64,000 nt of DNA, from assembly GCF_023055435.1 (NCBI RefSeq), contig NW_025964367.1, positions 992,001 to 1,056,000 of the forward strand, in the 5' to 3' direction. Both the position numbers and the translations under genes were made by a program. This document shows, one piece after another, positions 6,935-27,385 of the stretch. A model generated the notes under the pieces. That model was not told where the DNA came from. It searched no databases and saw only the letters and a list, made by a program, of their open reading frames with translations. Every line of letters starts with the position of its first letter. Position 1 is the stretch's first letter. This DNA comes from Haliotis rufescens. Lineage: Eukaryota.

Positions 6935-7615
6935 TGTAAGGATCACAATAAATGTCAATTCATCCTAGAACAAAAGAACAATTCTCATTTCCATTCCATC
7001 TTCATTCTCATTCTCAACTCATCACCAATAAATAACCTCTTTTGAATTGGAAGATTGACTGCAAAGGAAAAGTAAACAATCATACGTTTGCAGTTCAATA
7101 TGTAAACAAAACAATAACAATGTATGACAATTACTAAAACAACAAAAGTTGAGAAAAGACATTAAATTGTGACAAAATAATTGCAAGATCATTTGCCCAG
7201 AAAGAATGTATACATAAGTGATTGAAAACTGAACACATTATCATTACTTCAGAAAAGTTACAAATACAACAATTTGGGAAATAAAATTGCTACAGAAATA
7301 TATTGACAATGGAAAAGAAATACAAATGCATGACAACATACCATTTTGGTAGACCCATATTCTTCTTTAATCTTTACTTTTTGCCTTTTTGTCTCTGACC
7401 ACATGGGTCCTCATTCTCTTTTTCGAGAAACTAAAAAGCATGCATGGCATGCAGCCTAAACAGAGTGACCTTCCTTGGCTAAACTCCTGAAGCATGCATA
7501 AAATAATAATCTTTTACATGCTAATTTTGGAATGAAAACTTAGGAAAAAGTTAAACTTGAATAATTTGGAAAAGTAAATAGGAATTATTTTAGAGATGTT
7601 ATTTTGACCGTAACA
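6935..7615 (-). repeat. BEL 3' LTR
   Basis: tgtaaggatc...gaccgtaaca, adjacent to the PPT. Confidence 0.95.
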
Positions 7616-7884
7616 CCCCAGCCCCTTAATTGTACCAATATAAATGGGACAATTACGAATATAGACAAAAGAAAACTATTTATAAATAAAATGCGAAAAT
7701 AAAACAAATGCTTTTAAGATAACAGAGATATACCCAATGAAAATTACCTCTTTTCATCAAGCAAATTGTGTCACAAAATGTATCAATTCAAATTCTTTGT
7801 ATCATAACACGGTATTACAAATTCATTCATTCTTACTCAAATATTAACAGCATTTCAATAAAACACAATGGAATAGATGAAATA

Positions 7885-8051
7885 GTGAGTGAGTGAGTAT
7901 GGTTCCACGCCGCCCCCAGCAATATTCCAGCAATATCACGGCGGGGGACACCAGAAATTGGCCTCACACAATGCACCCATGTCAGAAATCGAACCCGGGT
8001 CCCCAGCATGACAAGGGAACGCCTGAACCACCAGGCCACCCGACCGCCACA
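7885..8051 (-). mobile_element. SINE family A nested in the BEL 3' UTR (A-to-G hypermutated)
   Basis: TSD aatagatgaaata at 7872-7884 and 8052-8064. About 13 T>C changes (plus strand) relative to the other family-A copies. Confidence 0.9.
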
Positions 8052-8129
8052 AATAGATGAAATAATAAAACTTCAAATCATTTCATCACTGAGTTCATAT
8101 GCACTTAATGCATCACTGAATTTCACTGT

Positions 8130-11100
8130 TTATTCATCCGTTTCAAGAACAAAGCACAGTTTTGTTACAGGTCTCTGTAACACGGATGTTTGCGTTTTTA
8201 CAGTCACAGTCCTGACAAGTCCTTTCTTGTCTGCAAACACTTTCAGGACTCTACCGAGAGCCCATGAATTTCTGGGTGTGTTCTCAACAAGGAGAACAAT
8301 GTCGCCTACTTTCACATTTCGCCGTTTCTTTGTCCATTTCTGTCTGATCTGTAATTGGGGTAAGTATTCTTTTACCCACCGTCTCCAAAACACATTGGCT
8401 AAATACTGAATTTGACGCCATCGTCTCCTTACGTAATTGTCCGAGACGTCAAAACTTCCTGGCGGCATATGTTCACCTGCACGAAGAGTGAGGAGGTGAT
8501 TAGGGGTTAGAACACACAGATCATTTGGATCACTACTCACAGATGTTAGTGGTCTGTTATTGATGATTACCTCCACCTCACAAAATAATGTCTGTAACCC
8601 CTCATCATCCAAATGAATCACTTGTTGATGCAGCAGGGAATTTAACACTTTTCGAACTGTCCGAATCATTCTTTCCCATACTCCACCATGGTGTGAAGCT
8701 GCAGGTGTGTTGAATTCCCATGAAATTCCTTTCTGTTGAAGTGATGTATGAATCTTACTCTGATTTAATTTGTTTATCTCATCGCAGAGTTCTCGCTCAC
8801 TTCCGACCAGGTTGGTTCCATTATCGGAGCGAATGGATTTCACTGTCCCTCTCCTAGCAATGAATCTTCTCACTGCATTAATGCATGAATCTGTATCTAG
8901 AGAGAACGCCATTTCTAAATGCACTGCTCTGACTGTAAGGCAGGTAAATATCACACCATACCTTTTCACTTCTTTTCTTGCTCTCTTCACCATTATTGGA
9001 CCAAAGAAGTCCATACCCACGTGTGAAAATGGTGGTTCATCTACAGAGAGACGATCTGACGGAAGACTCGACATTTGCTGCTCCATGACACAAGCTCTGT
9101 ACTTCCGGCACAGGACACACTTGGACACTAGGCTCTTGATAATAGAGCCAGCCCCCATTATCCAATAATTCTGTCTCAATTGGGCCAGCATTGATTGATA
9201 TCCAAGATGTCCAACTTTCTCATGGCTGTCTCTCAATATCAAAGATGTGATAGCAGACTTCTTTGGTATGATAACTGGATGTTTGGCATTGAATGGAATG
9301 TTAGCTTTATCTAGGCGTCCTCCGATTCTCATAATTCCATCAATTACAACAGGATTCAGTTTGACTAGAGGAGATCTGGGTCTCAAACAACACTTACTTG
9401 TTGTCAACATTTTTATTTCTTCATGGAAACACTGTTGTTGCACATGACGTATCAATGTCACTTCTGCTTTTTCAACCATTTCGATTGACAATTGCTTGAA
9501 TTTCATGACCTTTTTCTTCAGGTTTTGGATGAAAAGGAGAATCCATCCAACAGCTCTCTTAAGTCTGGTCCAATCTGAATAGTGACTGATTAACTTGTCA
9601 AGTGGAGAATAGTGAGCTGCATTAAGTGTAGTAGTAGCTACAGTCCTTTTCACCTCTGGATCATTTGCTGGAAGAATCAACTCTTTCTCATTGCTGTTGA
9701 CTTGCCATTCTGATTCTGGTTTCCTTAGGAAATCTGGACCCTTCAACCATATATCAGCCTGGAGAAACTTGTTTACTTTCATACCTCTAGACGCTGCATC
9801 GGCTGGATTAGATTTGGTATGGATGTAGTTCCACTGGTTCTTGTCTGAAGCTTCTCTGATTATCTGAACTCTGTTTGCAACGAATGTGTGGAATCTGTTG
9901 GTGTCATTGGCAATGTATCTGAGTACTGACCAGCTGTCTGTCCAGTAGAAAGTTTCTGTTACTATATATTCCAGTTCATCTCTGATCATTTTGCAGAGTT
10001 TCATTGCAATAGTTGCTGCTGTCAACTCCATCCTTGGTATAGTCACTCGTTTCAGAGGTGCTACTCTTGATTTCCCCATGACGAAGGAGACATGAATTTC
10101 ATTTCTTGAGTTGATTAGTCGTAGATAGGCGACTACTCCATAACCATGATCACTGGCGTCCGAGAACATATGAAGTTGACAGGTGACGACTGATCCAAAC
10201 TCTTCTGTCTTGAAACATCTGGGTAGTTTTATGTTTCTGAGGTGTGATAAACCATTTAACCACTCTCTCCATATCTTCATGTCATCTCCAGATATTTCCT
10301 TGTCCCATTCTACATTGTCTCTACACAGTTTCTGCAGCAGGATCTTGGCAACTAGGACATATGGTGACACATATCCTAACGGGTCATATACTGAGCTGAC
10401 CATGGAGAGTATTCCTCTTCTAGTAGGTGGTTTGTCTTTCACTTTAGTGTTGTATTGAAAACAGTCTTTCTCTACTGACCATGTCACACCAAGAGCTCTT
10501 TCAACAGGGAGTTGATCAGATTTCAGATCGATAGATTTCAGACTCTTTGCTCTCTCACTAGGTTGTATGCTCTCAACTACAGTGTGTCTGTTACTCATCC
10601 ATTTGGTAACACGGAAACCTCCCCTTGCACACAGTTCACGCACATCAGTTACAATAGATTTAGCTATGTCTTCATTCTCAACTGATTTCAGCAGGTCATC
10701 TACGTAGAAGGATCTGAGGATGACATCGGTTATGAGAGGATTGAACATTTCTCTGTTATCTTCTGCAGTTTGGCGTAGAGCAGCTGTCGAACAACTGGGC
10801 GATGATACTGCTCCGAACAAGTGCACACACATGCGATATACTGCAGGTTCTGATTGAAGATCTCCATCTGGCCACCAGTAGAACCTGAGGAAGTCTCTGT
10901 CATCTCGTGGGACTCGTACCTGATAGAACATAGATTCTATATCAGCCATTAGGGCCACAGGCTCTTGTCTGAATCGCAGTAATACACCGATGAGGCTGTT
11001 GGTTAAGTCAGGGCCTTGAAGCAGTAGATTGTTGAGTGATGTTCCTTGATGTGTAGCTGCACAATCAAACACCACTCGGATCTTGTCTGGTTTGTGAGGG

Positions 11101-14036
11101 TGATACACACCATGATGAGGAATGAACCATACCTTTCCATCGTCCTGTTTCAGTTCATCATCAGGCACCTTTTCAGCATAGTTCTTTTCCAGAATGATGT
11201 TCATGAAGTCTTTGTAGTCGCTGAGAAAGCCATTATTTCTCTTCATCTTCTGTTTCAGATTCATCAGCCTCTGATAGGCTTGGTAGTGATTGTCTGGGAG
11301 GCGGACTGAGTCTCTCTTGAATGGAAGGGGTATTGTGTAATGTCCATCATTTAGTGTTATGCTCTCCTTGACTTTCTCCATAAATCTGATATCATTGTGT
11401 GATGGCTGGCGTTTGTCGTCGATGACACGTTCTGGGAAGTCATAGTTGATTGACTGTTGGACAAGCTGACCAAGTTTCTTCAACTCTTCTATTTCCTGAA
11501 TAGCAGTTATATCAGCTCTGTTGACAGTGAAGCAGTTCTGTACATCTGTATGTCTCACAACATTCCACACTACCCATCCCAGTCTGGTAAACGTTGCATG
11601 TGGACTTCCTTGAGGTCCTGTCTTGACATGCAGAGGAGAATAGGCATCTGGAACATTGTTGCCTATTAGTATACCTATCTCAGAGTCAATCTGAGGAAGG
11701 GAAACACCTCTCAAGTGTGGCCATCCAGAGATATCGGTTTGGGTTGGAATATGCTGATGCGTCACTGGCATTCTATCTTTTGTGTAGAGCTTGGGCAACT
11801 GTACAAAGTTCTCTCCTGTCAGATCACTTACTTCCAGGTGGTTGATGCTGTAGGTTATCATAGAGTGTGGGTGTCCCATGGTCTCCAGAGTTATCTTTAA
11901 TCTTTTACCCTCACATCCTAACTTCTGTTTCATGCTGTCAGTGATGAAGGAAACACTGCTTCCAGGATCCAGAAAGGCATAGGTTCTGATAGCGTGACTA
12001 CTTCCTTTCCTTCTCAGCATCACAGGAATTATTGCCATGGTACATTCTTCTTCTCCAGCTCCCATACAACTCACTGTGTTGGAACTACTTTCCCTGCTTG
12101 TTTTCTGTCCATCATGTCTACTGTCTATTTGAGCCTTAGGCTTGCTGCGGTTGAAATGTAGGACTGTTTGATGACTGAGGCCACAGTTGTTGCAGGATAT
12201 GGTTGCGTTGCAGTCCAAACTTTTGTGTCCATAGTGTAGACATCGGAAACATAGTCCCTTTGTCCTTAGATATTGTAGCTTGTCAACATGTTCCATTCCT
12301 TGCCACTGTTTACACTGTTCAAGTCCATGACCTTCATCCTTGCAGTAGATACATGGAGAAAGTAGAGCCTTGACTTTGCTTGGTGTCTCCATGGGTCTAG
12401 TTTCTCTACTCCTTTGTTGATCATCCTGAGACAGATTTGTAGACATGACCTTTGGCTTGGACTTGAACCATTTATCTGGTGTCTTTGACAGTTCACTGAG
12501 GGCTTTTCTACCGTAGACTGGATCATTTGCCTTTTTTGCCTCTCTTCTGACGAACTCTACAAGTGAGCTAAATGGAATGGTTCTACCTTGAGCCTTGATG
12601 TTCTGTACAATGTTTCTCCATCTATCGTGATAGTGATATGGCAGCTTTATTACGAGTTTTCTCATGTTGTCTGGGTAATCAAGAATCTTCATGGAGTGTA
12701 TGCTCTTGATTGCATTCTCACATTCTGTGAGGAAAAGTGCAAACTCGTCCAGTGCCTTTGGATTGTCCACTTTAATCAATGGCCAGTTGAATGCTCGCTT
12801 GATAAATGCTGAAGCAATGGTGTCTGGATTACCATAGCGTTCTTCAAACTCATTCATGATTGCCTCATATGCGTGATATCCATCCAGATAGCTGTAACCC
12901 ACCACAATCCGATTGGCCTCATCCTTCGTGTATTGGTCCAAATAGTTAACTATTTCTTCAGGATCCTCAGTGTTGGTAAGGACATAACTTCTGAACTGTC
13001 TTGTGAATCTTTTGTAGTCGATCGGATCCCCGCTGAATGGCTTCATTTCCACTTGAGGTCTTTTGAGATGTTTGACAACAGATGAGTATTCTAGTAGAGG
13101 ACTTGCATATCCATAGCCTGGAGCTGTCATGACATCAGGATATGTTTGTGGGTAGTAGGGGTCAGGTTGATACTGTGGTGTTGTATCCGTTCTGTATACA
13201 TGTTGAGGAGGAACAGTTCTTGGATAGAATTCAGGAGGAGCATATTGTCCTGGCATTTCATTCTTCACGTGAGTCATATTCAGATCTTCAGCTTCCTGTT
13301 TGGGTGGAAAGTGATTTTCCTCTTGAGGAGCGAATCTGACATAACTTTCTACTGGCTGGGATTTGACATGTGTTTGTTGTGGATCTTCACCTTGTGCAGA
13401 TAGGACTTCTAATTTTTCACCGATTTCCCTCTCATATTCTTCAACTACTCTAGTCTTGGCATCTAGTGCTGCTATTTCTGTTTTCAACTTCAATTCTTTC
13501 TCTTCCATGTGAATTCTAAGCTTCTCCATTTCTAATCTTCCTACGTCCCTTAACGCGGAAGCCCTTGCCAACAATTCTGCCCTCTCTTGTTTATGTTTTA
13601 ACTTGAACATTGAGGTTGAACTTCGGGCAGAAGAAGACTTAACACTGCGAGATTTAACTTCACTTACCGCACTGTTATCATGAAACCATTTCTCAAGGTT
13701 TTGTTTAAATTGTCTTATTACAGGTGTTTCTTCTATGTCAACTTTTTGGTCATATAATGTCTTTTCATTAACATCTAACAGATTTGTGTATTCTTCTTTC
13801 ACACTGTAGTACTTATCTAGCAATGTCATGTACTGTTTATGCTCAAACTGCATCCTCCCAACATCATGCGTGTCCGACATCAAAGACTGAACACTGTCCT
13901 GCTTTGCTTTTAACTGTCTGAATGTTAATTTCAATAATCTCTGTTTCTGTTCTTTAGTGTAAAGCAACCCTCTATCTGTCATTTTCCTGTTTCTACTTGA
14001 AATACTACTGAATAGCGATGCATTATCTTCTTCCAT
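8130..14036 (-). CDS. BEL/Pao gag-pol polyprotein (Gag with Zn knuckles, protease, RT, RNase H, integrase), ~1968 aa, uninterrupted
   Basis: First ATG at 14036 (in-frame TAA just upstream of the TTG at 14054). Knuckles CIYC..H..C, CFRC..H..C and CNNC..H..H; protease FLDPGSS; RT YVDD; RNase H FSDAS/IPRMEL/WTDS/NPAD; integrase HHCC, DFFG, SDNG and WERM. Confidence 0.97.
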   Translation of the reverse strand: MEEDNASLFSSISSRNRKMTDRGLLYTKEQKQRLLKLTFRQLKAKQDSVQSLMSDTHDVGRMQFEHKQYMTLLDKYYSVKEEYTNLLDVNEKTLYDQKVDIEETPVIRQFKQNLEKWFHDNSAVSEVKSRSVKSSSARSSTSMFKLKHKQERAELLARASALRDVGRLEMEKLRIHMEEKELKLKTEIAALDAKTRVVEEYEREIGEKLEVLSAQGEDPQQTHVKSQPVESYVRFAPQEENHFPPKQEAEDLNMTHVKNEMPGQYAPPEFYPRTVPPQHVYRTDTTPQYQPDPYYPQTYPDVMTAPGYGYASPLLEYSSVVKHLKRPQVEMKPFSGDPIDYKRFTRQFRSYVLTNTEDPEEIVNYLDQYTKDEANRIVVGYSYLDGYHAYEAIMNEFEERYGNPDTIASAFIKRAFNWPLIKVDNPKALDEFALFLTECENAIKSIHSMKILDYPDNMRKLVIKLPYHYHDRWRNIVQNIKAQGRTIPFSSLVEFVRREAKKANDPVYGRKALSELSKTPDKWFKSKPKVMSTNLSQDDQQRSRETRPMETPSKVKALLSPCIYCKDEGHGLEQCKQWQGMEHVDKLQYLRTKGLCFRCLHYGHKSLDCNATISCNNCGLSHQTVLHFNRSKPKAQIDSRHDGQKTSRESSSNTVSCMGAGEEECTMAIIPVMLRRKGSSHAIRTYAFLDPGSSVSFITDSMKQKLGCEGKRLKITLETMGHPHSMITYSINHLEVSDLTGENFVQLPKLYTKDRMPVTHQHIPTQTDISGWPHLRGVSLPQIDSEIGILIGNNVPDAYSPLHVKTGPQGSPHATFTRLGWVVWNVVRHTDVQNCFTVNRADITAIQEIEELKKLGQLVQQSINYDFPERVIDDKRQPSHNDIRFMEKVKESITLNDGHYTIPLPFKRDSVRLPDNHYQAYQRLMNLKQKMKRNNGFLSDYKDFMNIILEKNYAEKVPDDELKQDDGKVWFIPHHGVYHPHKPDKIRVVFDCAATHQGTSLNNLLLQGPDLTNSLIGVLLRFRQEPVALMADIESMFYQVRVPRDDRDFLRFYWWPDGDLQSEPAVYRMCVHLFGAVSSPSCSTAALRQTAEDNREMFNPLITDVILRSFYVDDLLKSVENEDIAKSIVTDVRELCARGGFRVTKWMSNRHTVVESIQPSERAKSLKSIDLKSDQLPVERALGVTWSVEKDCFQYNTKVKDKPPTRRGILSMVSSVYDPLGYVSPYVLVAKILLQKLCRDNVEWDKEISGDDMKIWREWLNGLSHLRNIKLPRCFKTEEFGSVVTCQLHMFSDASDHGYGVVAYLRLINSRNEIHVSFVMGKSRVAPLKRVTIPRMELTAATIAMKLCKMIRDELEYIVTETFYWTDSWSVLRYIANDTNRFHTFVANRVQIIREASDKNQWNYIHTKSNPADAASRGMKVNKFLQADIWLKGPDFLRKPESEWQVNSNEKELILPANDPEVKRTVATTTLNAAHYSPLDKLISHYSDWTRLKRAVGWILLFIQNLKKKVMKFKQLSIEMVEKAEVTLIRHVQQQCFHEEIKMLTTSKCCLRPRSPLVKLNPVVIDGIMRIGGRLDKANIPFNAKHPVIIPKKSAITSLILRDSHEKVGHLGYQSMLAQLRQNYWIMGAGSIIKSLVSKCVLCRKYRACVMEQQMSSLPSDRLSVDEPPFSHVGMDFFGPIMVKRARKEVKRYGVIFTCLTVRAVHLEMAFSLDTDSCINAVRRFIARRGTVKSIRSDNGTNLVGSERELCDEINKLNQSKIHTSLQQKGISWEFNTPAASHHGGVWERMIRTVRKVLNSLLHQQVIHLDDEGLQTLFCEVEVIINNRPLTSVSSDPNDLCVLTPNHLLTLRAGEHMPPGSFDVSDNYVRRRWRQIQYLANVFWRRWVKEYLPQLQIRQKWTKKRRNVKVGDIVLLVENTPRNSWALGRVLKVFADKKGLVRTVTVKTQTSVLQRPVTKLCFVLETDE

Positions 14037-14116
14037 AGTTTCTGATTTATTCAATTAACTTCTCATTTAGATTTCTCTTTTCTGATTCTCATGGATAGGG
14101 TCAAAATGTCAATGAA

Positions 14117-14797
14117 TGTAAGGATCACAATAAATGTCAATTCATCCTAGAACAAAAGAACAATTCTCATTTCCATTCCATCTTCATTCTCATTCTCAAC
14201 TCATCACCAATAAATAACCTCTTTTGAATTGGAAGATTGACTGCAAAGGAAAAGTAAACAATCATACGTTTGCAGTTCAATATGTAAACAAAACAATAAC
14301 AATGTATGACAATTACTAAAACAACAAAAGTTGAGAAAAGACATTAAATTGTGACAAAATAATTGCAAGATCATTTGCACAGAAAGAATGTATACATAAG
14401 TGATTGAAAACTGAACACATTATCATTACTTCAGAAAAGTTACAAATACAACAATTTGGGAAATAAAATTGCTACAGAAATATATTGACAATGGAAAAGA
14501 AATACAAATGCATGACAACATACCATTTTGGTAGACCCATATTCTTCTTTAATCTTTACTTTTTGCCTTTTTGTCTCTGACCACATGGGTCCTCATTCTC
14601 TTTTTCGAGAAACTAAAAAGCATGCATGGCATGCAGCCTAAACAGAGTGACCTTCCTTGGCTAAACTCCTGAAGCATGCATAAAATAATAATCTTTTACA
14701 TGCTAATTTTGGAATGAAAACTTAGGAAAAAGTTAAACTTGAATAATTTGGAAAAGTAAATAGGAATTATTTTAGAGATGTTATTTTGACCGTAACA
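14117..14797 (-). repeat. BEL 5' LTR
   Basis: Direct repeat of 6935-7615. Confidence 0.95.
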
Positions 14798-15097
14798 GGT
14801 ATGAATATCGACGGCTTATTGTTTATGTAAGTAGGATGTAAAATGAAAAAGCTTGGCTAACCTTTATCAAATTAATATTAAGCTTATATAAAACATATGG
14901 ACAGTAAATTAATTAGAATGAAATAAAAGTAGAATATTAGAGGAAGCTAATTTTAAATGTACAAGAATTTGGATATACAGGTATATAAGATTAAGTTGGG
15001 AATATTTTATTATAATATTAGCTGTAGTTTTGATTAATTGGATTTAAAATAATGTAAGGAACTTTCAGCGAATTGGGACAAATATGTACACGATGAC

Positions 15098-15322
15098 ACA
15101 CAGACCGTCTCCAAAGTACAGCCGGCCTACATCAGAGGAGACTGTGTCAGTTCAACACAGACCGTCGTCAAAGTAGACCCGGCCTTCATCAGAGGAGACT
15201 GTGTCAGTTCAACATAGATTGTCTCAAAGGTAGACCCAGCCTAGATCAGAGGATACTGTGTTAGTTCAACATAGATCGTTTCCATAGTAGACCCAGCCTA
15301 GATCAGAGGAGACTGTGTCAGT
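15098..15322. repeat. 57-bp minisatellite, proximal array overlapping the lectin stop codon (~4 units)
   Basis: The first unit on the minus strand (15322-15266) is the coding sequence TDTVSSDLGWVYYGNDLC*. Confidence 0.9.
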
Positions 15323-17376
15323 GGGTTGAGGTCGGGGGAGCAGTTCACACTCTCGAGTTCCTCTGTTGTAGTTGACACCGACACAGGCTCCAGACAACAT
15401 ACACTGAAGGACACAGGACAATGGGGACATGTCAGGTGAAGATACAATGACAGGGGAGACAAGTCGTGCTGCTGATGCATTGAAATAGCCGAATCGCTTC
15501 CTGGCTGAAATATGTCCACATAATAGAATTATGGCATCTTAATAATATGTTTACTGTCCGGAGTGTACTATTTAACCTCTTTTGTGTTTCAGAAAACTAT
15601 AGAGTCGGACTTTTGGAAACCCGTTACTGTGCAATATGACTATTTTTCGTGAAACATGGATAATTAATCCAAAACAGGAATCCATGCATATAGATGTATT
15701 ATGTCGTTGTTAAGGCAGGACTCATTGAACTCACTTACTGTTGTTCACTCCGACACACCTCATTTGCAACGAATTACCAAAATCACTCATTAATCAGGCT
15801 CGTTAATCCGACATAGTGATCAGAGGACTCCGTTGTCATCTGCCCGCGAGTACACAGCCCGTGTATTGATGCAAGATGAGTGGGCTGATAGCAGCATATT
15901 ACAACGGATGCAGAGATAAAGAATTTTATGTCTTTATGTTTGACAATTACAATATGATTTCGGAACCTCAATGGCTTTTTAAGATGTGACTTATTTATAT
16001 AGGCCGTCCTACCTGGCTGTACTCCATACACTTCAAGTTCACAGAAGTTGAGAACATCCGCTTTGCCTCTGATTTTCGGTTTCCACAGTCTGATGAACCT
16101 TCCAAACACCGGAGCATCACATGCTATGTTCCCCATGGAACCAAACGTGCCAGTGTAGTTCTTACAGATGGAGAAAGCTGCTGATGGACATCGCGATGGA
16201 TTTCGTACATACACCTGGATTACAAAGTCATGGAGTCTTTCCCCTGAAAGAATAACATTAAAATAATAAACACAGTACTATAATTGTATTTGGCATAAAA
16301 CATTTAGCTTCAAGCATAATTATACAAAAACAGTGCTTAAGATGAATGCGTATATATGTTTCTGTGATGTGGCATGTCTTACAGTAACTTCGTATATTCA
16401 AGCATCTTCAGAAACCATCTGTATGGTCGACTGATACTTATTTGACGATGATAATAATTTGAATGAAAGATGAATTCTGGGTGAAGGTTGACGCAGAGTA
16501 GAAGTAGTTTGAGATACCGTTACGTACCACAGCAGTCTCCCCTGTTGTAGATGGTGACGTTGTGGACACTGTACTGCCCCAGGAGATCCACAACAAACCA
16601 GGGCGACATGTCACCAAAGTTAGTGTGACTGCAGACACCGTCGCGTATATCGGTTCCATGGCTGCCGTCGACAGCATTAGCAGCGATTTCGCGTAAACTA
16701 TTCACGCTGCTCATCCATGCTGGTTTCTTCAGAGCCAGGTTCAAACTTTGGAATTTGCAGACTGAAAATTGAGATTCTAAGTCATATGTGTGTATCGACA
16801 ATGAATTTATCTGAAAGAACCAAATGTTTTATGTTTTGTAAAATGTGTATTTCCAGCTGTCCGGGGCACACATCTGCACATTCGCCTTCATGATATTGAC
16901 ATCATGCAGTATCACCCTCTTTACATTGCTTTGTGACTTAGGATGTTCATGAGATTACTTTACAAGGGAAAATGAGTGACATTACGTGAGGAATAACCAT
17001 TTCCCTGCATTTCAATGCATCGTATCTTTTTCATAATATTTAGAAATAACGTCCATGAACAGAGAGGGTATGTTTTGAAGCAGGACATGTGCTCGCCTGA
17101 GACTGGTTCTGCTCCAGTATGAGTACCATCTATGCAGCCTATTATCTTCTCTACTGCCCTGACATGGCTATAGTCTTACTGATTCGAAGAGAAAGCGTTA
17201 GATATCTAAAAAGCTTCTGTCTCTTATTATATGGCTACAAACCTTCAATTGCTGTACAAAATATATCCGAAGTATAGCCTATAAACCTATTACTTACGAA
17301 TTTAACAAAAAAATGAGACCTCACCATCCAAATATATGACGAGCAGGAAAGAGATCCGGGAGTAGAGGTCTGCCAT
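15266..17376 (-). CDS. F-type lectin (fucolectin) plus C-terminal PAN/Apple-like domain, ~251 aa, copy 1
   Basis: Exons 17376-17325, 16761-16528, 16243-16013 and 15504-15266, all GT-AG with phase-1 introns, total 756 nt in frame. Motifs NLALKKPA, NAVDG, CSHT..PWFVVDL, H-x27-RGDCCGER and LNFCELEVYG. The last exon has C-x3-C-x5-C-VGVNY-x6-C-ELL...WVYY. The N-terminus is a short hydrophobic putative signal peptide. Confidence 0.88.
16985..17165 (-). mobile_element. PIF/Harbinger transposase relic in lectin intron 1
   Basis: Minus strand ~17118-17146 encodes IIGCIDGTH, the Harbinger first catalytic Asp motif. Copy 2 reads GCTDGTH near 55190-55215. Confidence 0.55.
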
Positions 17377-18438
17377 ACTGTCGCTGATCAATTCTATTAC
17401 CAACACGGCTGATGTGTTTAAGAAACTGAAGACTTGAAAATGACAATGTTCAATATTGATTGAAATCTCCTGACAGTACGTTGGCTCAACAGAACGTCTT
17501 TTTGTACCTGTTGGTGGGTTGCTGCAGAAACACAAGTCACAGTGACTTTAGTAGCCTGCAGTGTCGTATCGCTGCACCCTGGATGTTCCGGAAGGTTATA
17601 ACTTAATCATGCTGGTGTTTGTTGTCTGGGGACTGATGCTTCCACAATGATGGATTGTTGTGTTCCATAACTTCGATCGTTAAATGTCTTTTTCAGATGT
17701 AATCGATTTCAGTTGAGAAATGTATCCCAAGGGTATACCTACACTTGTACCCTGGCCGTCTTGTACTTGTCCTTCAAAACCCCTCATGAAACAGTTATTG
17801 ATCTGTTATATACTGACCAACAAAGCAAGGGGTCATGAAGGGGATATGTTTTGGAGTGAAGAACACACATGCAATTTCATAAAGATATCTAAAAAAATAT
17901 TCACGATCCCTAACATGTTTGGTCAGTATATATCCGTGTCCGGCTAAAGACGTTTCATTTCAAAATGAAACACCACAGACAGTACAGATACCGATGTATT
18001 GAGAAGTGCTCAATCGTTGATGTACCGTTTTCATGTTTATTGCAGAACTGCTGTTCTGCGTCGGGCAATAAAGACTGCGAGTGCTACCGAGAGTGCAGGT
18101 CATATTTACCCTGAACACCTGGTGTCATAACTGATTTCATTCACATCATTTTCACCGCTATTTTGCCTTTTACGCCCAAAGGGCCCTTTTTTCGGGTGAT
18201 CATTGAGACTTGTTATTCTCTGGCGTTGACGTTGTAAGGTTCTACATGCATTACTATGACAATCAGTAATTGTATTTTCACTCGACATAATGCTGAAAGT
18301 ACTTATCATATTGCTAGATGATTAATGCTAGGCATTATTCGTGTTAGCAATACAAATAATAATATACCCTTAACTAAATTGTTATCACTCGATTCATGCA
18401 GATGTGATGGCGTAGAAGGAGGCCTATAGCCAAAATGA

Positions 18439-18699
18439 TTTGTTTGCTTTTTAACGCCGCAATCAGCAATATTACAACTATATGACGGCGGTCTGTAAAT
18501 AGCCGAGTTTGGACCAGACAATCCAGTGATTGATGTCATGAGCATCGATCTATGCAATTGGAATACGATGGAATGCATCAACCACGTCAACGAGCCTGAC
18601 CACCTGATCCCGTTAGTCGCCTCTTACGACAAGCATAGTCACCTTTTACAACAAGCATGGGTTCCTTAAGACCTATTCTACCCTGGATCTTTACGGGTG
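18439..18699 (-). mobile_element. SINE family C (core gtcgtaagaggcgactaa, Nin/Deu-domain-like)
   Basis: Same family at 26696, 33876, 42148 and 56500; (aaac)n-type tail. Confidence 0.8.
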
Positions 18700-19299
18700 T
18701 AGCCCTAATGACATAAATGCAGACTTAAATGTGTACTTGTGAAATGTAATTCTCCATATCCTACATAGGCGAAGTATAACATGTGTGTTCTCGTGATCTA
18801 TATACGTGAGTAAATGCATTAAACAATACCGTGTTGGGCTTCACATTGTTTATGTCACCAGTGTCTACAACATATTTGTTGGCTACAAAGATTGTGATTA
18901 AATCACCCGACACGAATATTTTTGATAAAGTAACAATTACGTGTGGAAGTTGACTTTAATCACTATTTATTTGGGGGATTACCTCCCTTGAGCAGACGGA
19001 TGTGTTTCAAATTCAACGAGGATAACATATAACGTCAATTTGTGGTACAGATGTACATCAAGAAGAACTTATCCAGTGTTATGGGAATATCTTAAGAAGC
19101 ATGGAAAGGTCGGATCGATAGGTTTGTGCAACCTAGAGGCCACGGGCATGTAGACATATCTTTTCCCTACACCCCTGCGTAAAACTGGGCGGAGGGGACA
19201 GCTATGGTGTTTAGGATTTTGTTGTGTACAACTGCTTTCATCACAATGTAGACTATAGGATCGGTCACTGCATCACTTAACGAACGATGTCTACATTGG

Positions 19300-21500
19300 A
19301 TTTTGTGTCACTAATACAGGTTGTAAAGGTGAGGTATGTATGAATGTACAGGACAAGGGAATCTTGCTTACATATCCAAAACTGAACCGTACTCGTACCC
19401 AAGAAGTCAGGAGACATCCGTTTGTTTCATTGATAATGTTTGCCGGTGACATAGAAATGAACCCGGGACCGACTGATGGAGACTTCAGGATTAGAATCAG
19501 GCATCATAAATCAGATTAAGGAATCAGACGACAGGTTATCAAGAGACATAGATCTTTGAGAGAAGAAGTGCATTCAATCAAGGCAGAGGTAACTGAACTG
19601 AGAACAGGAGTCAGTATAAACAGAGAAGAACAGGCCGATCTCAGACTAGATGTGTATGAAGCGTCTAACAAAGTGGATGATCTGTATTACAGGACTGACA
19701 GTATTAGTGACCCAGAAAAGACAGAGCAGAAGAAATACTTTTATAGTAAATGGGTACCAGAAGGACTTATGGTTCGGGCAAGGAAACGGTATAAGACACT
19801 TTTAAAAGAGCCAGAGATAGGAATTCAAGAGTAATTTGCTGATGAAGCCATAGATTGCGTGTCGAGGGTGTTGAGCAAAATTTTTAATGTCCCCCACAAG
19901 GACGTAGACGGGAAGATTCCCACACAGGACCACGACTTCTGAGTTCTGGCCTCAAGGCTTGGGACTAGGGAGTAACTCGCTGAGTGTGAGACGAGACCGA
20001 GTGTGGTTGCAGGATGCCTCATGTAGATCCGACAGACAATGTAGATGATTGTGAAAATGAGAATAGAAAGTTTGGTTTTGTAATATATCGGGACTGAATT
20101 CTAAATCAACAGATCAGGACTTTACCGACTACATAAACCCATTTGACCTTATCGGCATAACAGACACATGGATGTAAGAAGATATAGACACAAGTTTGAC
20201 ATTTCAAGGATTCAAGCCCTGGTTCAAAGAAGCTGAAAAGATTTCAAACCCTTCAGACGGTATTGCCATATCAGTTAGACAACAGCTAGCTAAATACTAG
20301 TATGAAAATGGTCAAAAGTGTACGCAAATACCAATGTCTTTCTGAATGAAAATAATATCTCATGGATTAGAAAAAAATATGTCTTCATCATATTTAGAAA
20401 GTAACAAAAATCACACTTTCATGAAACCGTTTGAAACCGATTTTGAGGGACCCATTCATGCAATTTTCACTGCCATTTTGCCATTAACTGAAATTGCAAC
20501 TAAAGCCATGTACTGCCTCTAACAAATAGCTCGAAATCTACACCTACCTGTCGATTGTGTTCTCCCAGCAGTGGGTGTACCGTTGTTATATGGTTTCGAT
20601 ATGTTTGGTTTTGAGAAGGGACAGATTGTAGAAAGAGTTCATCTGTAATATTTCAAATTTCTATCTGGATTACGAAATTCTACACCAAAGTTTATGGTGC
20701 AAATATATAACCGTTTTATCTCGTTTTGGCATAAGCTTACCTTTCCGGATGATACTACAAACTTATCGCATATACTATTTAATTACATACAAAATTACTC
20801 TAATAGAAAAAAAACCCATTTAGTTATTCTTGGTTAAAAATGATCTTAAGTAATTTTAAACAACTACCTGTTTACGACAACCCTTCCTCTTGTATAACAC
20901 CATGGCTAGTCTCAGATATTTACCAGATTTTAAAAGATTTATTTATTTAAAACAGCAAAGTAACATTCTGCCGAGTTCAAAGAGATTTTATCATACACAT
21001 TTTAAACCACTACCAAAGGTTGAAAGTTGTTTATTCCTTCCTAGTATAACATCGTTGTCACTACTTAGATTATAGTACTGTAAAGCATAACTTAACCGTT
21101 GAAACTGACAGTTGGAAAAATGTACCCTTGGGAAACATAGTGTGATATTAATGTAACTCTCCTGCAGTCGGTGACGAATTCCACTACTTGTTTACACTGA
21201 AAGTACTGTTACAACTCAGATTAACACTCATACATGTACAATACAGAAAGTGGCATAAGGTATTATATTTGAGAAAAATGCTGACAAACATTAATATTAT
21301 AAAAGCATGAAACAAACTGTCAAAATGCATTTGTCCATCTGTCTTAGGCAAATGGTGAACACGTGGGAAATTGGTTGGTACCAACCAATTTCTTGATTTT
21401 TTTATGTGATTTATTGAAAACTGTATTTCGCTCGGGTGCCGCCGTCTTTGATAATAAAGTTAAGTGAAGTGAGGTGATGTGATGTGATGTGATGTGGAGT
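19300..21500 (+). mobile_element. Old internally deleted L2/CR1-group LINE with 2A-like motif
   Basis: AGDIEMNPGP (19442-19471), coiled-coil ORF1 remnant, endonuclease remnants (KVWFCNISGL, DLIGITDTW), C-terminal VGDEFHYLF, then AATAAA and a (gaagt/gatgt)n tail. 5' boundary is approximate. Confidence 0.75.
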
Positions 21501-22066
21501 TAAGTGAGGTGGTGAAAGGGCAGGACCCGCCACTCATACAATTTGCATGAAAACGTTAGTGATTGTTTGTTGCCTGACGCAGCACAAAAGTACTCTGCTG
21601 ACGTCCTGTGAAAAAAACAGACAATTAAACAACACGATAGTGCAACACGATACTGATTTTGCTGAAACAAAAAGCGATGTGTTATTTATTAATTACGTCT
21701 ACTGTGAACAAGTGCAGGGTCTCGGGCGATTTTAAGTAAAGAGAAACGTTAAAAAAATATAGCCGAGAGAAGTGGTAGAGGGCTCCAAGAAACCTTTTTT
21801 CTACTGCATTATCAAAGTTGCGATAGATGCCAAATCGCATTGAATCGTAGTGAACGAGAGCAGAGACGTCGGGCTTCAAAAACACTTTTTCTTACTGCAT
21901 AATCAAGGTTGAAGTCTAACTTCCGGTTTCTGAAAACACATTTTGTTTACATCAAAACCTTAAATATGAAAGTCCTATGGTTCTATCTCAGTGTATATTG
22001 GCACTTTTAGTTTAGCTATGTTTGTAGCAAAGTGTTGAGTCCTTCCGGTTTGGATTATGTCATTTG

Positions 22067-22244
22067 TGAGTGAGTGAGTGAGTGAGTGAGTATGGTTTTA
22101 ATCCGCCTTTAACAAAATTCCAGCCATATCAGGGCGTGGGACAACCAGAAATGGGCTTCATACATTGTGCTCAAGTTGGGATTCGAACCTGGATCTTCGG
22201 CGTTACGAGCAAACGCTTTAACCATCAGTGTAACCCACCGCCCC
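22067..22244 (-). mobile_element. SINE family A
   Basis: (gtga)n tail and family-A body, TSD tatgtcatttgt. Confidence 0.8.
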
Positions 22245-22444
22245 TATGTCATTTGTGGTTTCGAAAAACCGATGCTATTATGACTGTTGCTTTCTTTGTA
22301 ACTTAGTTATTCTTACTTAATGTTTGGATAATGTCACTTTCGTTGACAAGGCTGCCTGTCTAACATTTTTTTTCAACTGCAAGCCATGTGACTGTGGTTC
22401 AATTTATATTAAAACGCATATTCCAGAATTTACCAATTTCAGGA

Positions 22445-22670
22445 CCAGGGTCTAGTGGTAGAGCTTCCGCCTGGAGAGCGCAAGGTTCGGGGTTCGATCC
22501 TCGGCCACGTCATAGCAAAACACGTTAAAAGATGGTACTTGTTGTCATCCTGCCTGGCGCTCGGCATTAAGTGGCTAAAACAAGGAGTGGTCGGCTCGGA
22601 GCCAGTGTACTGTGTATGAGTGGGGTGTTCATGTTAAACTGCGACATCGTATCTCAGTGTGCTAGCACTA
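22445..22670 (+). mobile_element. SINE family B (3' truncated)
   Basis: ggtctagtggtagagcttccgcc...ggttcgatcc. Confidence 0.75.
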
Positions 22671-22960
22671 TACATACCAATTTTATGAAACGAGTGAATA
22701 GTTGTGGTATCTGACGAGCGAAAGCAAACAAGGTTGCTGGGGTCATCGAGTGTGCATAAGCTCCTCTCAGTGATCTATCAACTTCACAGGCAATGTCGCT
22801 GAATGAGCCAAGGGATGTTGAGAGCTTTCAATATTTGTTCGTGAAACGCGTTCCGAGAATACATAAGCACGCGTTTTGTTATCACACAATGTGTAATACA
22901 GCTGTATGTTTATTAAATGGGTGATCTCTTCACGGGCAAGTAATAAATATATATACTGTG

Positions 22961-23160
22961 CTGACACAGTCTCCTTCGATCTTGACTGGGTCTAATATGG
23001 AGACGGTCTATGTTGAACTGACACAGTCTCCTCTGATCTAGGCTGGGTCTAATATGGAGACGATCAGGACTGGGTACCATGGTGATGATCTGTCATAACT
23101 TGTGACAGTCTCCTCTAGTGTCTAGATAGTGTCTACTATAGATATGATCTGTGTTAATCT
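22961..23160 (+). repeat. Degenerate copy of the lectin-derived 57-bp repeat in opposite orientation
   Basis: actgacacagtctcctctgatctaggctgggtctaatatggagacgatc matches the end of the lectin last exon. Confidence 0.85.
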
Positions 23161-23509
23161 CGAATCTGGACCAGGCAAAACAGTGATTGAAAGCAAGAGC
23201 AATGAACCATGACCCCAATCCTTTAGCCAAGTCACAAAGCCTGACAACACTCCCATGTTATAAGAATGGGATACTAATCTGACATGAAATCCCCACAGGG
23301 CTATAGATCTGGACGAAATGTTAAGACGACGGTGTTTAGATTCTAAATGTGCGTCCAATAGAGTTTCACATTTGAGACTTTCACACCAAAAAACATGTTC
23401 TTTAATGCCTTTACAGTGCAAGCATCGAGGTTCAACTCGCCTCTTGATATGAGCATTTCACTTGAACAATATTGAATGGCTGGTGAAACCCATTATACAT
23501 GGGGTCATA

Positions 23510-24615
23510 TGCGGAGAAAGATGCATATATCAAAGGTCAAGTAGGGACTACTTTCAGTTTTTACAAACATGGCGTCACCCGTGTCAATCGGCGATCGAGT
23601 CAGAATTAACCATCGCGAATCTTGAGAAACCACTGGGATAATTGTTATCATTGTCAAGATAATAGTCTAAAATACTGAAAATCAGTGTCTTACTGTGGCG
23701 TAGCTCAGGCATTTTACAAGTTTCATCAAATTTGGAGATATAAATTGAAAAACAATTTAGCCAGGACTCTTGCCTAGCGGGATCAGTTTCCATATCTGTG
23801 CTTGTAGACCTTGCGGCTAGGAACCTTTTCCCCAAACTAAAACTGTTAGATTTTATATGTACGTATTGTTACTTTGTTTCTATATGTCCGAATTGTTACC
23901 TTGTTTCGTTTTGTCGCTGTGTGTACATCTGACTGCACTTCGTGATGTTATGACAGATCAGCCAGACGTGACGTCTCATAGACTAGGGTTGGAATAGCTT
24001 CCCTTTGATAAAGGGCCCTTACTCTATTGGCCAGACCGATGGATTGCCGCGATAGGCAAGCAGAAACAATTTGTGTAGGCAACTGTTGTTTGCGTCTATG
24101 TAGTTACGCTGTTGACTGTAGTCACTGTCCGACTGACACACAACTTACCTTCTGACGTAAAATATATATATCCGCACATTCCAGGAAAACTTATAATGTT
24201 TAGGTAATGTTTGTGAGAAATGGGAGGAGATTTGTCGAGCTCAGAATTGAAGAATGATATATGATAAAAAGGTTATCACGCTTGTGTGTTTGGGGATGGT
24301 AAATACCCTGTATCAGGAAAAACAAACTATGTATTCAGCTCGCTAAATACAATGTTTATTCCAAATACAGGATGTTTACCATCCCCAAACACACAAGCGT
24401 GATAACCTCTATATATGTACGTGACACTGCATTAGATTGTTTGTTGTTTTACGGATTTTTTTAACGCATTTTGATGTCGCTTCTTTCGACAAGAAGACGA
24501 AGTGTCAATGAAATAAGGGAAATACCTCATAACTGTCTTTACGTCAACGGACAATCTGGTGTAAAGTATAAAATAACCTCGGTATTTTTTATGTATATTT
24601 GAAAGTCCATTATTG
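23510..24615 (+). mobile_element. Non-autonomous element with palindromic module (Crypton-like)
   Basis: 23510-24408 is homologous to 32758-33692. A hairpin with 34-bp perfect arms spans 24270-24408. 24262-24615 is nearly identical to 35225-35580. Confidence 0.7.
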
Positions 24616-24684
24616 TAATGTGAGAGAGACAATTAAATCCATATAACGGAATTAACCTGGTACCTTCTTCCCTATTCACCTGTA

Positions 24685-24848
24685 GGAGCGGTTGGGTAGC
24701 CTAGTGGCTAAAGTGTTCGTTCGTCTCGCCGAAGAACCGGGTTTGATTCCCGACATGGGTACAATGTGTGAAGCCCATTTCTGGTGTGCCCCGCCGTGTT
24801 ATTACTGGAATATTGCTAAAAACGGCGTAAAAACATACTCACTCACTC
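24685..24848 (+). mobile_element. SINE family A
   Basis: Full head and actcactc tail, flanked by ccctattcacctg duplication. Confidence 0.85.
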
Positions 24849-25082
24849 CCTATTCACCTGGAGCTACAGAATTTTAAAACTTGCTGACTGCTTGAGGGAT
24901 GTTTTGTTTTTTTATTTGATGTTAATGTTTTACGAAACATCAAGTAATTTACTGAAATCCGTGAATATATATGCTTTGCTATAAATTGAACTACAATCAC
25001 AGGATTTTCAGCTGAAAAGTGTGTAAGGCAGGTAACTTTTTTAAATACCGAAAGTGATATAATCCAAACAACAAATGTCATA

Positions 25083-25243
25083 GAGCGGTGGGGTAGACTG
25101 GTGGTTAAAGCGTTTGCTCGTCACGCCGAAGATCCGGGTTCGAATCTCCTCATGAGCACAATGTGTGAAGTCCATTTCTGGTTGTTCCACGCCCTGGCGC
25201 TGCAGGAATATTGCTAAAAGTGGCGTTAAACCATACTCACTCA
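25083..25243 (+). mobile_element. SINE family A (inverted-duplication partner of 22067-22244)
   Basis: Family-A body with flanks homologous to those of the 22067 copy. Confidence 0.8.
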
Positions 25244-27331: not shown

Positions 27332-27351
27332 GCATCATTATCATCTCCATT

Positions 27352-27383
<32 letters not shown>

Positions 27384-27385
27384 TA
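27332..27385. repeat. (CAT)n microsatellite
   Basis: catcatcat run. Confidence 0.9.

What the first reader, a model, noticed from the sequence alone, without database searches (positions are those of the whole stretch)
15266..17376. Duplicated F-type lectins differ mainly in the loops around the sugar pocket
Seen: the introns and flanks of the two copies are nearly identical, but the proteins differ in clusters. SSVNSLREIAA vs SSVRQPH-VAA; SHGTDIRDGVCSHTNFG vs SHSTHLFNGVCIHTKNG; RGKADVLNFC vs RGKYDALNFC. By eye this is ~21 amino-acid changes plus one codon indel against about 6 synonymous changes, while the fucose triad (His...RxDxxxxR), the AVDG calcium motif and the cysteines are unchanged. 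Established: in F-type lectins (e.g. eel agglutinin AAA) the segments after the SS strand, before C-x-HT, after HT and before LxLCE form the CDR loops that tune specificity. Inference: strong diversifying selection, or loop-swapping gene conversion, on a recognition protein, possibly immune or gamete recognition (oyster bindin F-lectin repeats are a precedent).
Basis: partly seen in the sequence, partly recalled or inferred. Interest (0 to 1): 0.82.

Follow-up and report, generated by a model that had tools for sequence, protein, structure and literature searches.

The report
Fast-evolving pocket loops in duplicated lectins
Two neighbouring copies of a secreted fucose-lectin gene keep the same sugar-binding core, but the loops around the sugar pocket have changed about thirteen times faster than the genes' own introns; this is a well-supported but not new kind of case of selection for different glycan specificities after gene duplication.

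Summary
Two intact four-exon genes on the minus strand (15266-17376 and 53462-55446) each encode a signal peptide, an F-type lectin domain and a PAN/Apple domain. They sit in a roughly 47-kb tandem duplication.

- **Divergence:** non-coding sequence differs by 2.8%, exon 2 by 10.4%. The exon-2 loop stretch is the most divergent 90-column window in 24 kb of aligned duplicate sequence.
- **Protein changes:** 21 replacements plus one codon indel, against 8 purely synonymous codons. Fifteen replacements and the indel fall in four short segments, three of which align with AAA's CDR1-3 region (His27, Phe45 and Tyr46 among the aligned residues).
- **Conserved core:** the His/Arg/Arg triad, the vicinal Cys-Cys and the AVDGS calcium motif are unchanged.
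- **dN/dS:** gene-wide it is about 0.7, not above 1. Site models on four paralogues find about 10% of codons at omega about 15-18 (LRT p=1e-10, or 8e-6 when multi-nucleotide changes are allowed). In codons that are hypervariable in 26 distant paralogues, dN is 0.38 against 0.029 in introns.
- **Gene conversion:** no donor for copy 2's patches exists in the 1.33-Gb assembly.

Most of the burst lies on copy 2's branch. Expression of these two copies and their tissue are not shown; only a copy-3-like spliced transcript was seen. This is a new member of a known kind, like oyster bindin and eel fucolectin isoforms.

The parts
17325..17376 (-). Copy 1, exon 1: start codon and hydrophobic N-terminus (putative signal peptide), phase-1 donor
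   Evidence: identical to copy 2. The signal-peptide reading is inferred from the sequence and was not run through a predictor.
16528..16761 (-). [quoted passage not shown]
   Evidence: Pfam PF22633 2e-9; PDB 3CQO 2e-19 and 1K12 1e-11; intron 2 splice confirmed in a copy-3-like RNA contig.
16685..16702 (-). Copy 1, CDR1-like loop, codons 38-43 (NSLREI; copy 2 has RQPH-V at 54752-54766)
   Evidence: Residues 37-43 align with AAA 26-32; N38 aligns with His27 at the CDR1 apex. Sites 38 and 39 have posterior above 0.97.
16640..16657 (-). Copy 1, CDR2-like loop, codons 53-58 (GTDIRD; copy 2 has STHLFN at 54707-54724)
   Evidence: I56 and R57 align with AAA Phe45 and Tyr46. Sites 53 and 56 are in the selected class.
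16616..16630 (-). Copy 1, CDR3-like segment, codons 62-66 around the invariant His63 (SHTNF; copy 2 has IHTKN at 54683-54697)
   Evidence: H63 aligns with AAA His52. Sites 65 and 66 have posterior of at least 0.97.
16013..16243 (-). Copy 1, exon 3: C-terminal half of the lectin domain (Arg98, conserved Cys137, Arg, Cys163-Glu164)
   Evidence: A profile of nine paralogue exon-3 peptides matches 3CQO at 4e-7 and 1K12 at 0.015. The exon 3 to exon 4 junction is seen in a copy-3-like RNA contig.
16053..16067 (-). Copy 1, CDR5-like loop, codons 155-159 (GKADV; copy 2 has GKYDA at 54124-54138), just before the LNFCE strand
   Evidence: It lies in a loop 4 residues longer than in AAA. Sites 155-157 have posterior of at least 0.98. 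That it faces the pocket is inferred, not measured.
15266..15504 (-). Copy 1, exon 4: linker plus PAN/Apple domain and stop codon
   Evidence: Pfam PAN_1, 25.3 bits against a cut-off of 21.4. It is conserved: dN 0.014 between copies 1 and 2, and 0 between copies 1 and 3.
53462..55446 (-). Copy 2: whole gene (exons 55446-55395, 54825-54595, 54314-54084, 53700-53462), intact frame, canonical splice sites
   Evidence: Copy-2-type junctions are present in the contigs of two independent DNA runs.
1..26465 (.). Part of tandem unit 1 of a roughly 47.2-kb segmental duplication; collinear with 47163-64000 and beyond. Unit 1 starts 11.6 kb before the window.
35585..64000 (.). Part of tandem unit 2 (continues to about +80 kb). 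The N run at 42955-43111 lies inside this unit, 7.4 kb past the unit boundary.
15098..15322 (.). 57-bp minisatellite that begins with the last 19 codons and stop of exon 4. The copy 2 array is at 53123-53518.

Best explanation
These are two paralogous genes created by a roughly 47-kb tandem duplication. Each encodes a secreted protein with one F-type (fucose-binding) lectin domain followed by a PAN/Apple domain.

The scaffold, the calcium site and the primary fucose-contact residues (His63, Arg91, Arg98, Cys94-Cys95) are held constant. The loops that ring the pocket have been driven apart by positive (diversifying) selection, mostly along copy 2's branch. These are the CDR1-, CDR2- and CDR3-like segments in exon 2 and a CDR5-like loop in exon 3. 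The two further paralogues, copies 3 and 4, vary at the same positions.

The expected consequence is a small set of lectins that all dock a terminal fucose-like sugar but differ in which subterminal sugars or linkages they accept.

Shown: the gene structure, domain identity, clustering of changes, rate excess over introns, site-model support and absence of a donor. Inferred: secretion, actual sugar binding, changed specificity, and any immune or gamete role.
For: - **Gene models and domains:**
- **True tandem paralogy:** the units at window coordinates -11630..35584 and 35585..~80000 are collinear. The unit boundary lies on the same gap-free piece as unit 1. Copy 3 is inverted 20 kb further on, and copy 4 is on another contig.
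- **Rate excess over introns:** non-coding K is 0.028-0.029. The exon-2 loop window is the top outlier of 22,927 windows.
- **Independent codon class:** in 20 exon-2 codons chosen only because they are hypervariable in 26 distant paralogues, dN between copies 1 and 2 is 0.376, about 13 times the intron rate (Fisher p=4e-10). The rest of exon 2 has dN 0.048, not significant.
- **Same positions family-wide:** codons that differ between copies 1 and 2 sit in the family's most variable columns (entropy 2.70 vs 1.47 bits, p=2e-6).
- **Site models on four paralogues, 172 codons:** M1a vs M2a gives LRT 45.5, p=1e-10, with 9.5% of sites at omega 18. With double and triple substitutions allowed, LRT is 23.4, p=8e-6, with 10.5% of sites at omega 15. 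Selected sites are 38, 39, 53, 56, 65, 66 and 155-157.
- **Branch asymmetry:** copy 2 has 12 private substitutions in 231 exon-2 bases against 16 in 1370 non-coding bases (p=2e-4).
- **Mapping to solved structures:** residues 38, 56 and 57 align with AAA His27, Phe45 and Tyr46, which contact the fucose methyl group and subterminal sugars. The primary triad is invariant.
- **No template:** no donor for any of the four copy-2 patches at 3 or fewer mismatches genome-wide. There is no local template in the window.
- **Contrast within the gene:** the PAN exon is conserved.
Against: - Gene-wide dN/dS against dS is below 1 (0.68-0.71).
- Only four sequences were used. Site tests are known to give false positives under recombination, and the family does show mosaic history: copy 4's PAN exon has dS about 0.22 against 6-7% in its introns.
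- Runs of adjacent changed bases (5 of 6 bases in codons 39-40, plus a codon deletion) look more like one complex event than serial point substitutions.
- Identity along the 47-kb unit is patchy, from 93% to 98.5%. The introns may therefore have been partly homogenised, which would understate the age of the copies.
- No spliced transcript of copy 1 or copy 2 was seen.
- No structure could be predicted for the spliced protein, so 'faces the pocket' rests on alignment to AAA and FBP32.
Confidence: 0.6

Rival explanations
1. Loop swapping by short ectopic gene conversion (or another templated event). Copy 2's patches were copied from one or more of the several hundred other F-lectin exons, or from a donor that is now lost or unassembled, and were then retained.
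For: - The genome holds at least 150 scored F-lectin exon-2 homologues, out of 338 candidates.
- The changes come as dense multi-base patches plus an in-frame deletion.
- Copy 2's RQPH and IHTK resemble RQPQ and IHTK in a cluster on another contig at the protein level.
- The family shows mosaic history at copy 4's PAN exon.
Against: - None of the four copy-2 patches (23-25 bases each) occurs anywhere else in the 1.33-Gb assembly at 3 or fewer mismatches.
- A 100-base query over the variable stretch finds only the four close copies, at 81-83%.
- The protein-level look-alikes share only 5-6 bases and use a different Arg codon.
- The framework between the patches stays copy-1-like, so at least four separate micro-tracts, each exactly covering a loop, would be needed.
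- Copies 1, 3 and 4 each have their own unique loops.
Confidence: 0.15
2. Old loops, young surroundings. The copies are older than their introns suggest. Concerted evolution keeps homogenising the introns and framework, while selection against homogenisation preserves divergent loop segments as islands of divergence.
For: - Identity along the duplicated unit varies from 93% to 98.5%.
- Exon 2 has no site supporting the copy 1 + copy 2 grouping, although 3.5 would be expected from the non-coding rate.
- dS by the NG86 method (0.07-0.095) is nominally above the intron K of 0.029.
- Copy 4 is a mosaic.
Against: - Purely synonymous differences (8 in 173.5 sites) are not significantly above the intron rate (p=0.17).
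- Copy 2's loop changes are private and not shared with copies 3 or 4, so they mark no older shared lineage.
- The tracts that escaped homogenisation would have to be only 15-18 bases long, with conversion in between.
- This rival still requires selection for different loops. It changes the tempo, not the conclusion.
Confidence: 0.15
3. The two 'copies' are divergent alleles (haplotigs) that the assembler placed in tandem, so the contrast is allelic polymorphism rather than paralogue divergence.
For: - An N run (42955-43111) lies between the copies.
- 2.8% substitutions plus many indels, and a copy-specific LTR element, are within the range of allelic divergence I would expect, from my own knowledge and not checked here, in highly heterozygous marine invertebrates.
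- The contig depths of the copy-1 and copy-2 types in the DNA runs are unequal and cannot be interpreted.
Against: - The start of unit 2 (35585-42736) lies on the same gap-free stretch as unit 1 and repeats -11630..-4844.
- The sequences on the two sides of the gap are consecutive parts of the unit, not duplicates of each other.
- Both types occur together in contigs of two runs from two different studies, alongside copy-3/4-like sequence.
- Two more paralogues elsewhere show that the family does duplicate.
Confidence: 0.06
4. Relaxed constraint or decay of one copy, or sequence error in copy 2's exon 2.
For: There is no spliced transcript evidence for copy 2. Most of the changes are on copy 2's branch.
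Against: - Relaxation cannot exceed the neutral rate, yet the loops run about 13 times above it.
- Copy 2 keeps an open frame, all its splice sites, every cysteine, the triad and the calcium motif.
- Its indel is in frame.
- A contig matching both flanks but not the 88 variable bases, and the copy-2-type intron-3 junction, are present in two independent runs.
Confidence: 0.03

Closest known systems
Pacific oyster sperm bindin F-lectin repeats (as summarised in PMC5712786)
   Same: F-type lectin domains that keep the fucose triad. According to the review, positive selection acts on about eight sites clustered around the fucose pocket, with duplication and recombination adding variety.
   Different: Bindin is described as a single-copy gene with 1-5 tandem lectin repeats, alternative splicing and extreme allelic polymorphism. 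Here there are separate tandem genes, each with one lectin domain plus a PAN/Apple domain. Tissue and role are unknown, and allelic diversity was not measured.
Eel fucolectins: Anguilla anguilla agglutinin (PDB 1K12) and Japanese eel isoforms eFL-1 to eFL-7
   Same: Single-domain secreted F-lectins encoded by several genes. According to the review, variation is concentrated in CDR1 and CDR2, while His52 and CDR4 are strictly conserved (PMC5712786). The residues that vary here align with AAA His27, Phe45 and Tyr46.
   Different: About 40% identity in exon 2. There is one extra residue after the His, and the loop before the LxLCE strand is 4 residues longer. The C-terminal PAN/Apple domain is absent from eel lectins. 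Here the rate excess was measured against introns.
Striped bass FBP32 (PDB 3CQO)
   Same: Best solved-structure match to exon 2 (2e-19). It shares the triad, the vicinal Cys-Cys and the calcium motif.
   Different: FBP32 has two tandem lectin domains and no PAN domain. It is a vertebrate serum lectin.

Membership tests
F-type lectin domain (FTLD) | Sequence similarity to solved F-type lectins and to the F5/8-type-C superfamily models | tested here: met
   Exon 2 matches 3CQO at 2e-19 and 1K12 at 1e-11. An exon 3 profile matches 3CQO at 4e-7 and 1K12 at 0.015. Pfam PF22633 scores 38 bits against a cut-off of 27.8.
F-type lectin domain (FTLD) | Fucose motif: His, then Arg-x-Asp-x4-Arg/Lys downstream (written HX24RXDX4(R/K) in PMC5712786; His52/Arg79/Arg86 in AAA) | tested here: met
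   H63, then R91-G-D93-C-C-G-E-R98, in all four copies. The His-to-Arg spacer is 27 residues, one more than in AAA by alignment.
F-type lectin domain (FTLD) | Vicinal disulfide cysteines next to the Arg-x-Asp (AAA Cys82-Cys83) | tested here: met
   C94-C95 aligns with AAA C82-C83. That the disulfide actually forms is inferred.
F-type lectin domain (FTLD) | Cation motif h2DGx (two small hydrophobic residues, Asp-Gly, then a small polar residue) | tested here: met
   A47-V-D-G-S51 in both copies aligns with AAA A36-I-D-G-N40. The C163-E164 pair aligns with AAA Cys146-Glu147.
F-type lectin domain (FTLD) | Binds L-fucose or fucosylated glycans | not testable with these tools
   This needs recombinant protein and a glycan array or inhibition assay.
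PAN/Apple domain | Match to Pfam PAN_1 above the curated cut-off, with the cysteine core | tested here: met
   Copy 1 scores 25.3 bits and copy 2 scores 21.5 bits, against a cut-off of 21.4; copy 2 is at the threshold. There are five cysteines in exon 4. The pairing of these cysteines was not tested.
Lectin genes under diversifying selection at the binding loops (oyster bindin / eel isoform type) | A codon class with omega>1 by likelihood-ratio test | tested here: met
   M1a vs M2a gives p=1e-10, or 8e-6 with multi-nucleotide changes allowed. The test used four sequences only and did not model recombination.
Lectin genes under diversifying selection at the binding loops (oyster bindin / eel isoform type) | Selected sites surround the sugar pocket in three dimensions | tested here: inconclusive
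   By alignment, sites 38, 56 and 57 match AAA His27, Phe45 and Tyr46, and sites 155-157 lie in the loop before LxLCE. No model of the spliced protein could be made, so no distances were measured.
Lectin genes under diversifying selection at the binding loops (oyster bindin / eel isoform type) | Expressed in a recognition tissue (sperm, haemocytes, mucosa) | not tested
   Only contig-level RNA runs of unknown tissue were available. They gave a copy-3-like spliced contig and one unspliced copy-1-identical contig.

The most novel reading that the evidence does not exclude
Copy 2's loop codons were rewritten in one or a few bursts by a non-point process aimed at the loop-coding segments. This would be cassette-like micro-conversion from the genome's reservoir of several hundred F-lectin exons, or another templated or error-prone repair event. 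It would make this family a germline loop-shuffling system for an invertebrate recognition lectin, rather than ordinary stepwise positive selection.
Probability: 0.1. Interest if true: 0.8.

Novelty: new member of a known kind. Interest (0 to 1): 0.45.

Why it matters
This is a clean, internally calibrated example of how a recognition lectin diversifies after duplication. The introns of the same genes serve as the neutral yardstick, and the changes fall on the residues that tune specificity in solved F-lectins. It yields a short list of nine to twelve codons to swap between copies in binding experiments. It also adds a lectin-plus-PAN/Apple architecture that the F-lectin review read here (PMC5712786) does not mention. 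It does not open a new question, because the same pattern is already described for oyster bindin and eel fucolectins.

Tried and rejected
- **Donor search for gene conversion.** I ran a 100-base DNA query, four pattern searches at 3 or fewer mismatches, a codon-level comparison with 26 distant paralogues, and a local k-mer search. None found a donor.
- **Public protein searches for a close orthologue.** The search for homologous proteins with copy 2's exon 2 found no candidate. That search sees only proteins of 42-133 aa, so the blank says little. The full HMMER scan gave 2583 F-lectin hits, but none above about 52% identity. Ten short hits carried no PAN domain. The organism could not be named: run labels are coded, and the cluster names of distant hits span eel, salmonids and a gastropod.
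- **Joined spliced protein.** Exons were searched one by one by reference. The joined CDS was used only inside local scripts. As a result, no 3-D model and no distances to the pocket are available.
- **Reads.** All four runs laid were contigs, so depth, copy number and expression level cannot be read. At the 88% likeness I chose, copy-2-type exon-2 contigs fell just below the threshold. They appear only as a junction that skips the 88 variable bases.
- **Haplotig artefact.** Considered and judged unlikely from the geometry of the repeat relative to the gap.
- **Relaxed constraint.** Rejected because the rate exceeds neutral.
Full report
**What is there.**
- The finding's coordinates hold a four-exon gene on the minus strand: exons 17376-17325, 16761-16528, 16243-16013 and 15504-15266. 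All introns are GT-AG and the product is 251 aa.
- A second copy in the same orientation lies 38 kb away: exons 55446-55395, 54825-54595, 54314-54084 and 53700-53462, 250 aa.
- Searched exon by exon by reference, exon 2 matches the Pfam galactose-binding-like model PF22633. It also matches the solved F-type lectins FBP32 (3CQO, 2e-19) and eel agglutinin AAA (1K12, 1e-11).
- A profile of exon-3 peptides matches the same two structures.
- Exon 4 matches PAN_1 above its cut-off.
- The protein therefore reads as a hydrophobic N-terminus (putative signal peptide, inferred), one F-type lectin domain and one PAN/Apple domain.
- The joined spliced protein was not sent to any search or folding tool. 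It was used only in local scripts.

**Family membership.**
- By alignment to AAA, His63 matches His52, Arg91 matches Arg79, Asp93 matches Asp81, Cys94-Cys95 matches Cys82-Cys83, and Arg98 matches Arg86.
- AVDGS is the h2DGx cation motif, and Cys163-Glu164 matches Cys146-Glu147 (motif definitions from PMC5712786).
- There are two small differences from AAA: one extra residue after the His, and a loop 4 residues longer before the LxLCE strand.
- Sugar binding itself is untested.

**The observation.**
- The two CDSs differ at 21 replaced codons plus one deleted codon, and at 8 purely synonymous codons.
- Fifteen replacements and the deletion sit in four short segments: codons 38-43, 53-58, 62-66 and 157-159.
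- The introns are not 'nearly identical'. They differ by 2.8% in substitutions (74 of 2619) plus indels.
- Exon 2 differs by 10.4%.
- Across 24 kb of aligned duplicated sequence (mean 2.7%), the window 16617-16709 is the single most divergent of 22,927 windows, with 22 of 90 columns changed. The next windows are mis-registered satellite or SINE alignments.

**Context: a real tandem duplication.**
- I stitched 134 kb of the contig around the window. Two collinear units of about 47.2 kb appear, at window coordinates -11630..35584 and 35585..~80000, at 93-98.5% identity.
- The only N run (42955-43111) lies inside unit 2, 7.4 kb past the unit boundary. The sequences on its two sides are consecutive parts of the unit, not duplicates of each other. 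A haplotig mis-join at the gap therefore does not explain the repeat.
- Copy 1's unit carries a young LTR retrotransposon insertion at 6935-14797, with LTRs 99.85% identical.
- The genome (1.33 Gb) has two more close paralogues: copy 3 is inverted 20 kb beyond the window, and copy 4 is on another contig. There is also a fragment, and at least 150 more distant F-lectin exon-2 homologues.
- All four close copies have the lectin + PAN + 57-bp minisatellite layout.

**Rates.**
- Gene-wide pairwise dN/dS for copies 1 and 2 is 0.68-0.71 (dN 0.050-0.068, dS 0.073-0.095). By the literal test 'dN/dS>1' the gene as a whole does not qualify.
Purely synonymous differences do not differ from the intron rate.
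- To avoid choosing loop codons after seeing the data, I took the 20 exon-2 codons that are hypervariable (entropy of at least 2.5 bits) in 26 distant paralogues. There, dN between copies 1 and 2 is 0.376, about 13 times the intron rate (p=4e-10). In the remaining 50 codons dN is 0.048, not significant.
- Codons that differ between the copies sit in the family's most variable columns (p=2e-6).
- I wrote maximum-likelihood codon site models for the four close paralogues (172 codons). The tree ((1,2),3,4) is backed by 21 non-coding informative sites against 7 and 6 for the alternatives.
- M2a beats M1a with LRT 45.5 (p=1e-10), with 9.5% of sites at omega 18.
- Dense multi-base patches can fool such tests, so I added rates for double and triple substitutions. 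The LRT is then 23.4 (p=8e-6), with 10.5% of sites at omega 15.
- The selected sites are 38, 39, 53, 56, 65, 66 and 155-157, with 41, 55 and 142 at lower posterior.
- The excess is lopsided. Copy 2 has 12 private substitutions in exon 2 where about 2.7 are expected (p=2e-4). Copy 1 has 3.
- The PAN exon is conserved.

**Where the sites sit.**
- By the phmmer alignment, residue 38 matches AAA His27 at the CDR1 apex.
- Residues 56 and 57 match Phe45 and Tyr46 in CDR2, and residues 65-66 follow the fucose-binding His.
- The review PMC5712786 names exactly these AAA residues as forming the fucose-methyl pocket and touching subterminal sugars. It reports CDR1/CDR2 variability among eel isoforms, and eight positively selected pocket sites in oyster bindin.
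- Sites 155-157 lie in the lengthened loop before the LxLCE strand. That this loop faces the pocket is inferred from the fold, not measured.

**Selection or conversion?**
- The patches are dense: 5 of 6 bases changed in codons 39-40, plus a codon deletion. That is the footprint expected of a templated event.
- No template was found. Each of the four copy-2 patches is unique in the assembly at 3 or fewer mismatches.
- A 100-base query finds only the four close copies.
- Protein-level look-alikes (RQPQ, IHTK) on another contig share only 5-6 bases.
- The window holds no local template.
- The framework between patches stays copy-1-like, and every close copy has its own loops.
- I therefore favour positive selection (0.6).
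- Two variants remain open: conversion from an unsampled donor (0.15), and older loops preserved while concerted evolution homogenised the surroundings (0.15). The second is hinted at by patchy identity along the unit and by copy 4's mosaic PAN exon. Both variants still need selection to keep the loops different.

**Independent reads.**
- Only contig-level runs could be laid.
- Two DNA runs from different studies contain three things:
  - copy-1-type exon 2 with a single difference, which is a Leu40-to-Ile change in CDR1;
  - a copy-3/4-like exon 2;
  - copy-2-type junctions, namely the copy-2 form of intron 3 and a contig matching both flanks but not the 88 variable bases.
- The two types therefore coexist in other individuals, and the differences do not vanish. 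Depth cannot be interpreted.
- One probable RNA run has spliced contigs that confirm intron 2 and the exon 3 to exon 4 (lectin to PAN) junction. They carry copy 3's letters and copy 3's distinctive exon-4 start.
- Another run has a 162-base contig identical to copy 1 that includes 42 intron bases, so it is unspliced or genomic.
- Expression of copies 1 and 2 is therefore not shown.

**Verdict.** It is not supported for gene-wide dN/dS>1 or for a conversion donor, and it is untested for function. This is a new member of a known kind.

Noticed in passing
window 6935-14797: LTR retrotransposon inserted only in copy 1's unit. LTRs at 6935-7615 and 14117-14797 differ at 1 of 681 bases. One uninterrupted 1974-aa ORF lies on the minus strand (8130-14054). 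Another first-stage note calls it BEL-like; the family was not tested here.
   Followed up: partly
window 15098-15322, 53123-53518, 5457-5805, 50430-51700; also L054 5173-6124 and L007: A 57-bp minisatellite whose unit equals the last 19 codons plus stop of the PAN exon follows every close copy of the gene. Related arrays about 80% alike, with up to 22 units, lie elsewhere in the duplicated unit.
   Followed up: partly
window 15747-15920 (intron 3 of copy 1): Very high-copy repeat. Summed contig depth is hundreds to thousands of times that of the neighbouring bins in all four runs, including the RNA-like ones. It is probably a SINE-like element.
   Followed up: no
L054 4825-5055 (copy 4, other contig): Copy 4's PAN exon lies about 6 kb downstream of its exon 3. 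Its dS against copies 1-3 is about 0.22, although its introns 1-2 differ from theirs by only 6-7%. This points to a mosaic history, with recombination or conversion among paralogues.
   Followed up: partly
window 15467-15504 vs L002 2771-2807: The first 12 or so codons of exon 4 (the linker between lectin and PAN) are unrelated between copies 1/2 (RKRFGYFNASAA) and copies 3/4 (QQFNYFR...), while the rest of the exon is nearly identical.
   Followed up: no
L007 / L012 (other contig, 36 kb from copy 4): Gene fragment with exon 1, the first 37 bases of exon 2 and a PAN exon followed by a long minisatellite. It is probably a deletion-derived pseudogene.
   Followed up: no
beyond the window, window-equivalent 69220-71174 (L009/L051): A satellite with a period of about 39 bp and roughly 50 units lies inside tandem unit 2, with no counterpart in unit 1.
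   Followed up: no
window 16696: In DNA run X1 the copy-1-type exon-2 contig differs from the window at one base. The change turns Leu40 into Ile, inside the CDR1-like loop, so it is a possible replacement polymorphism at a hypervariable site.
   Followed up: no
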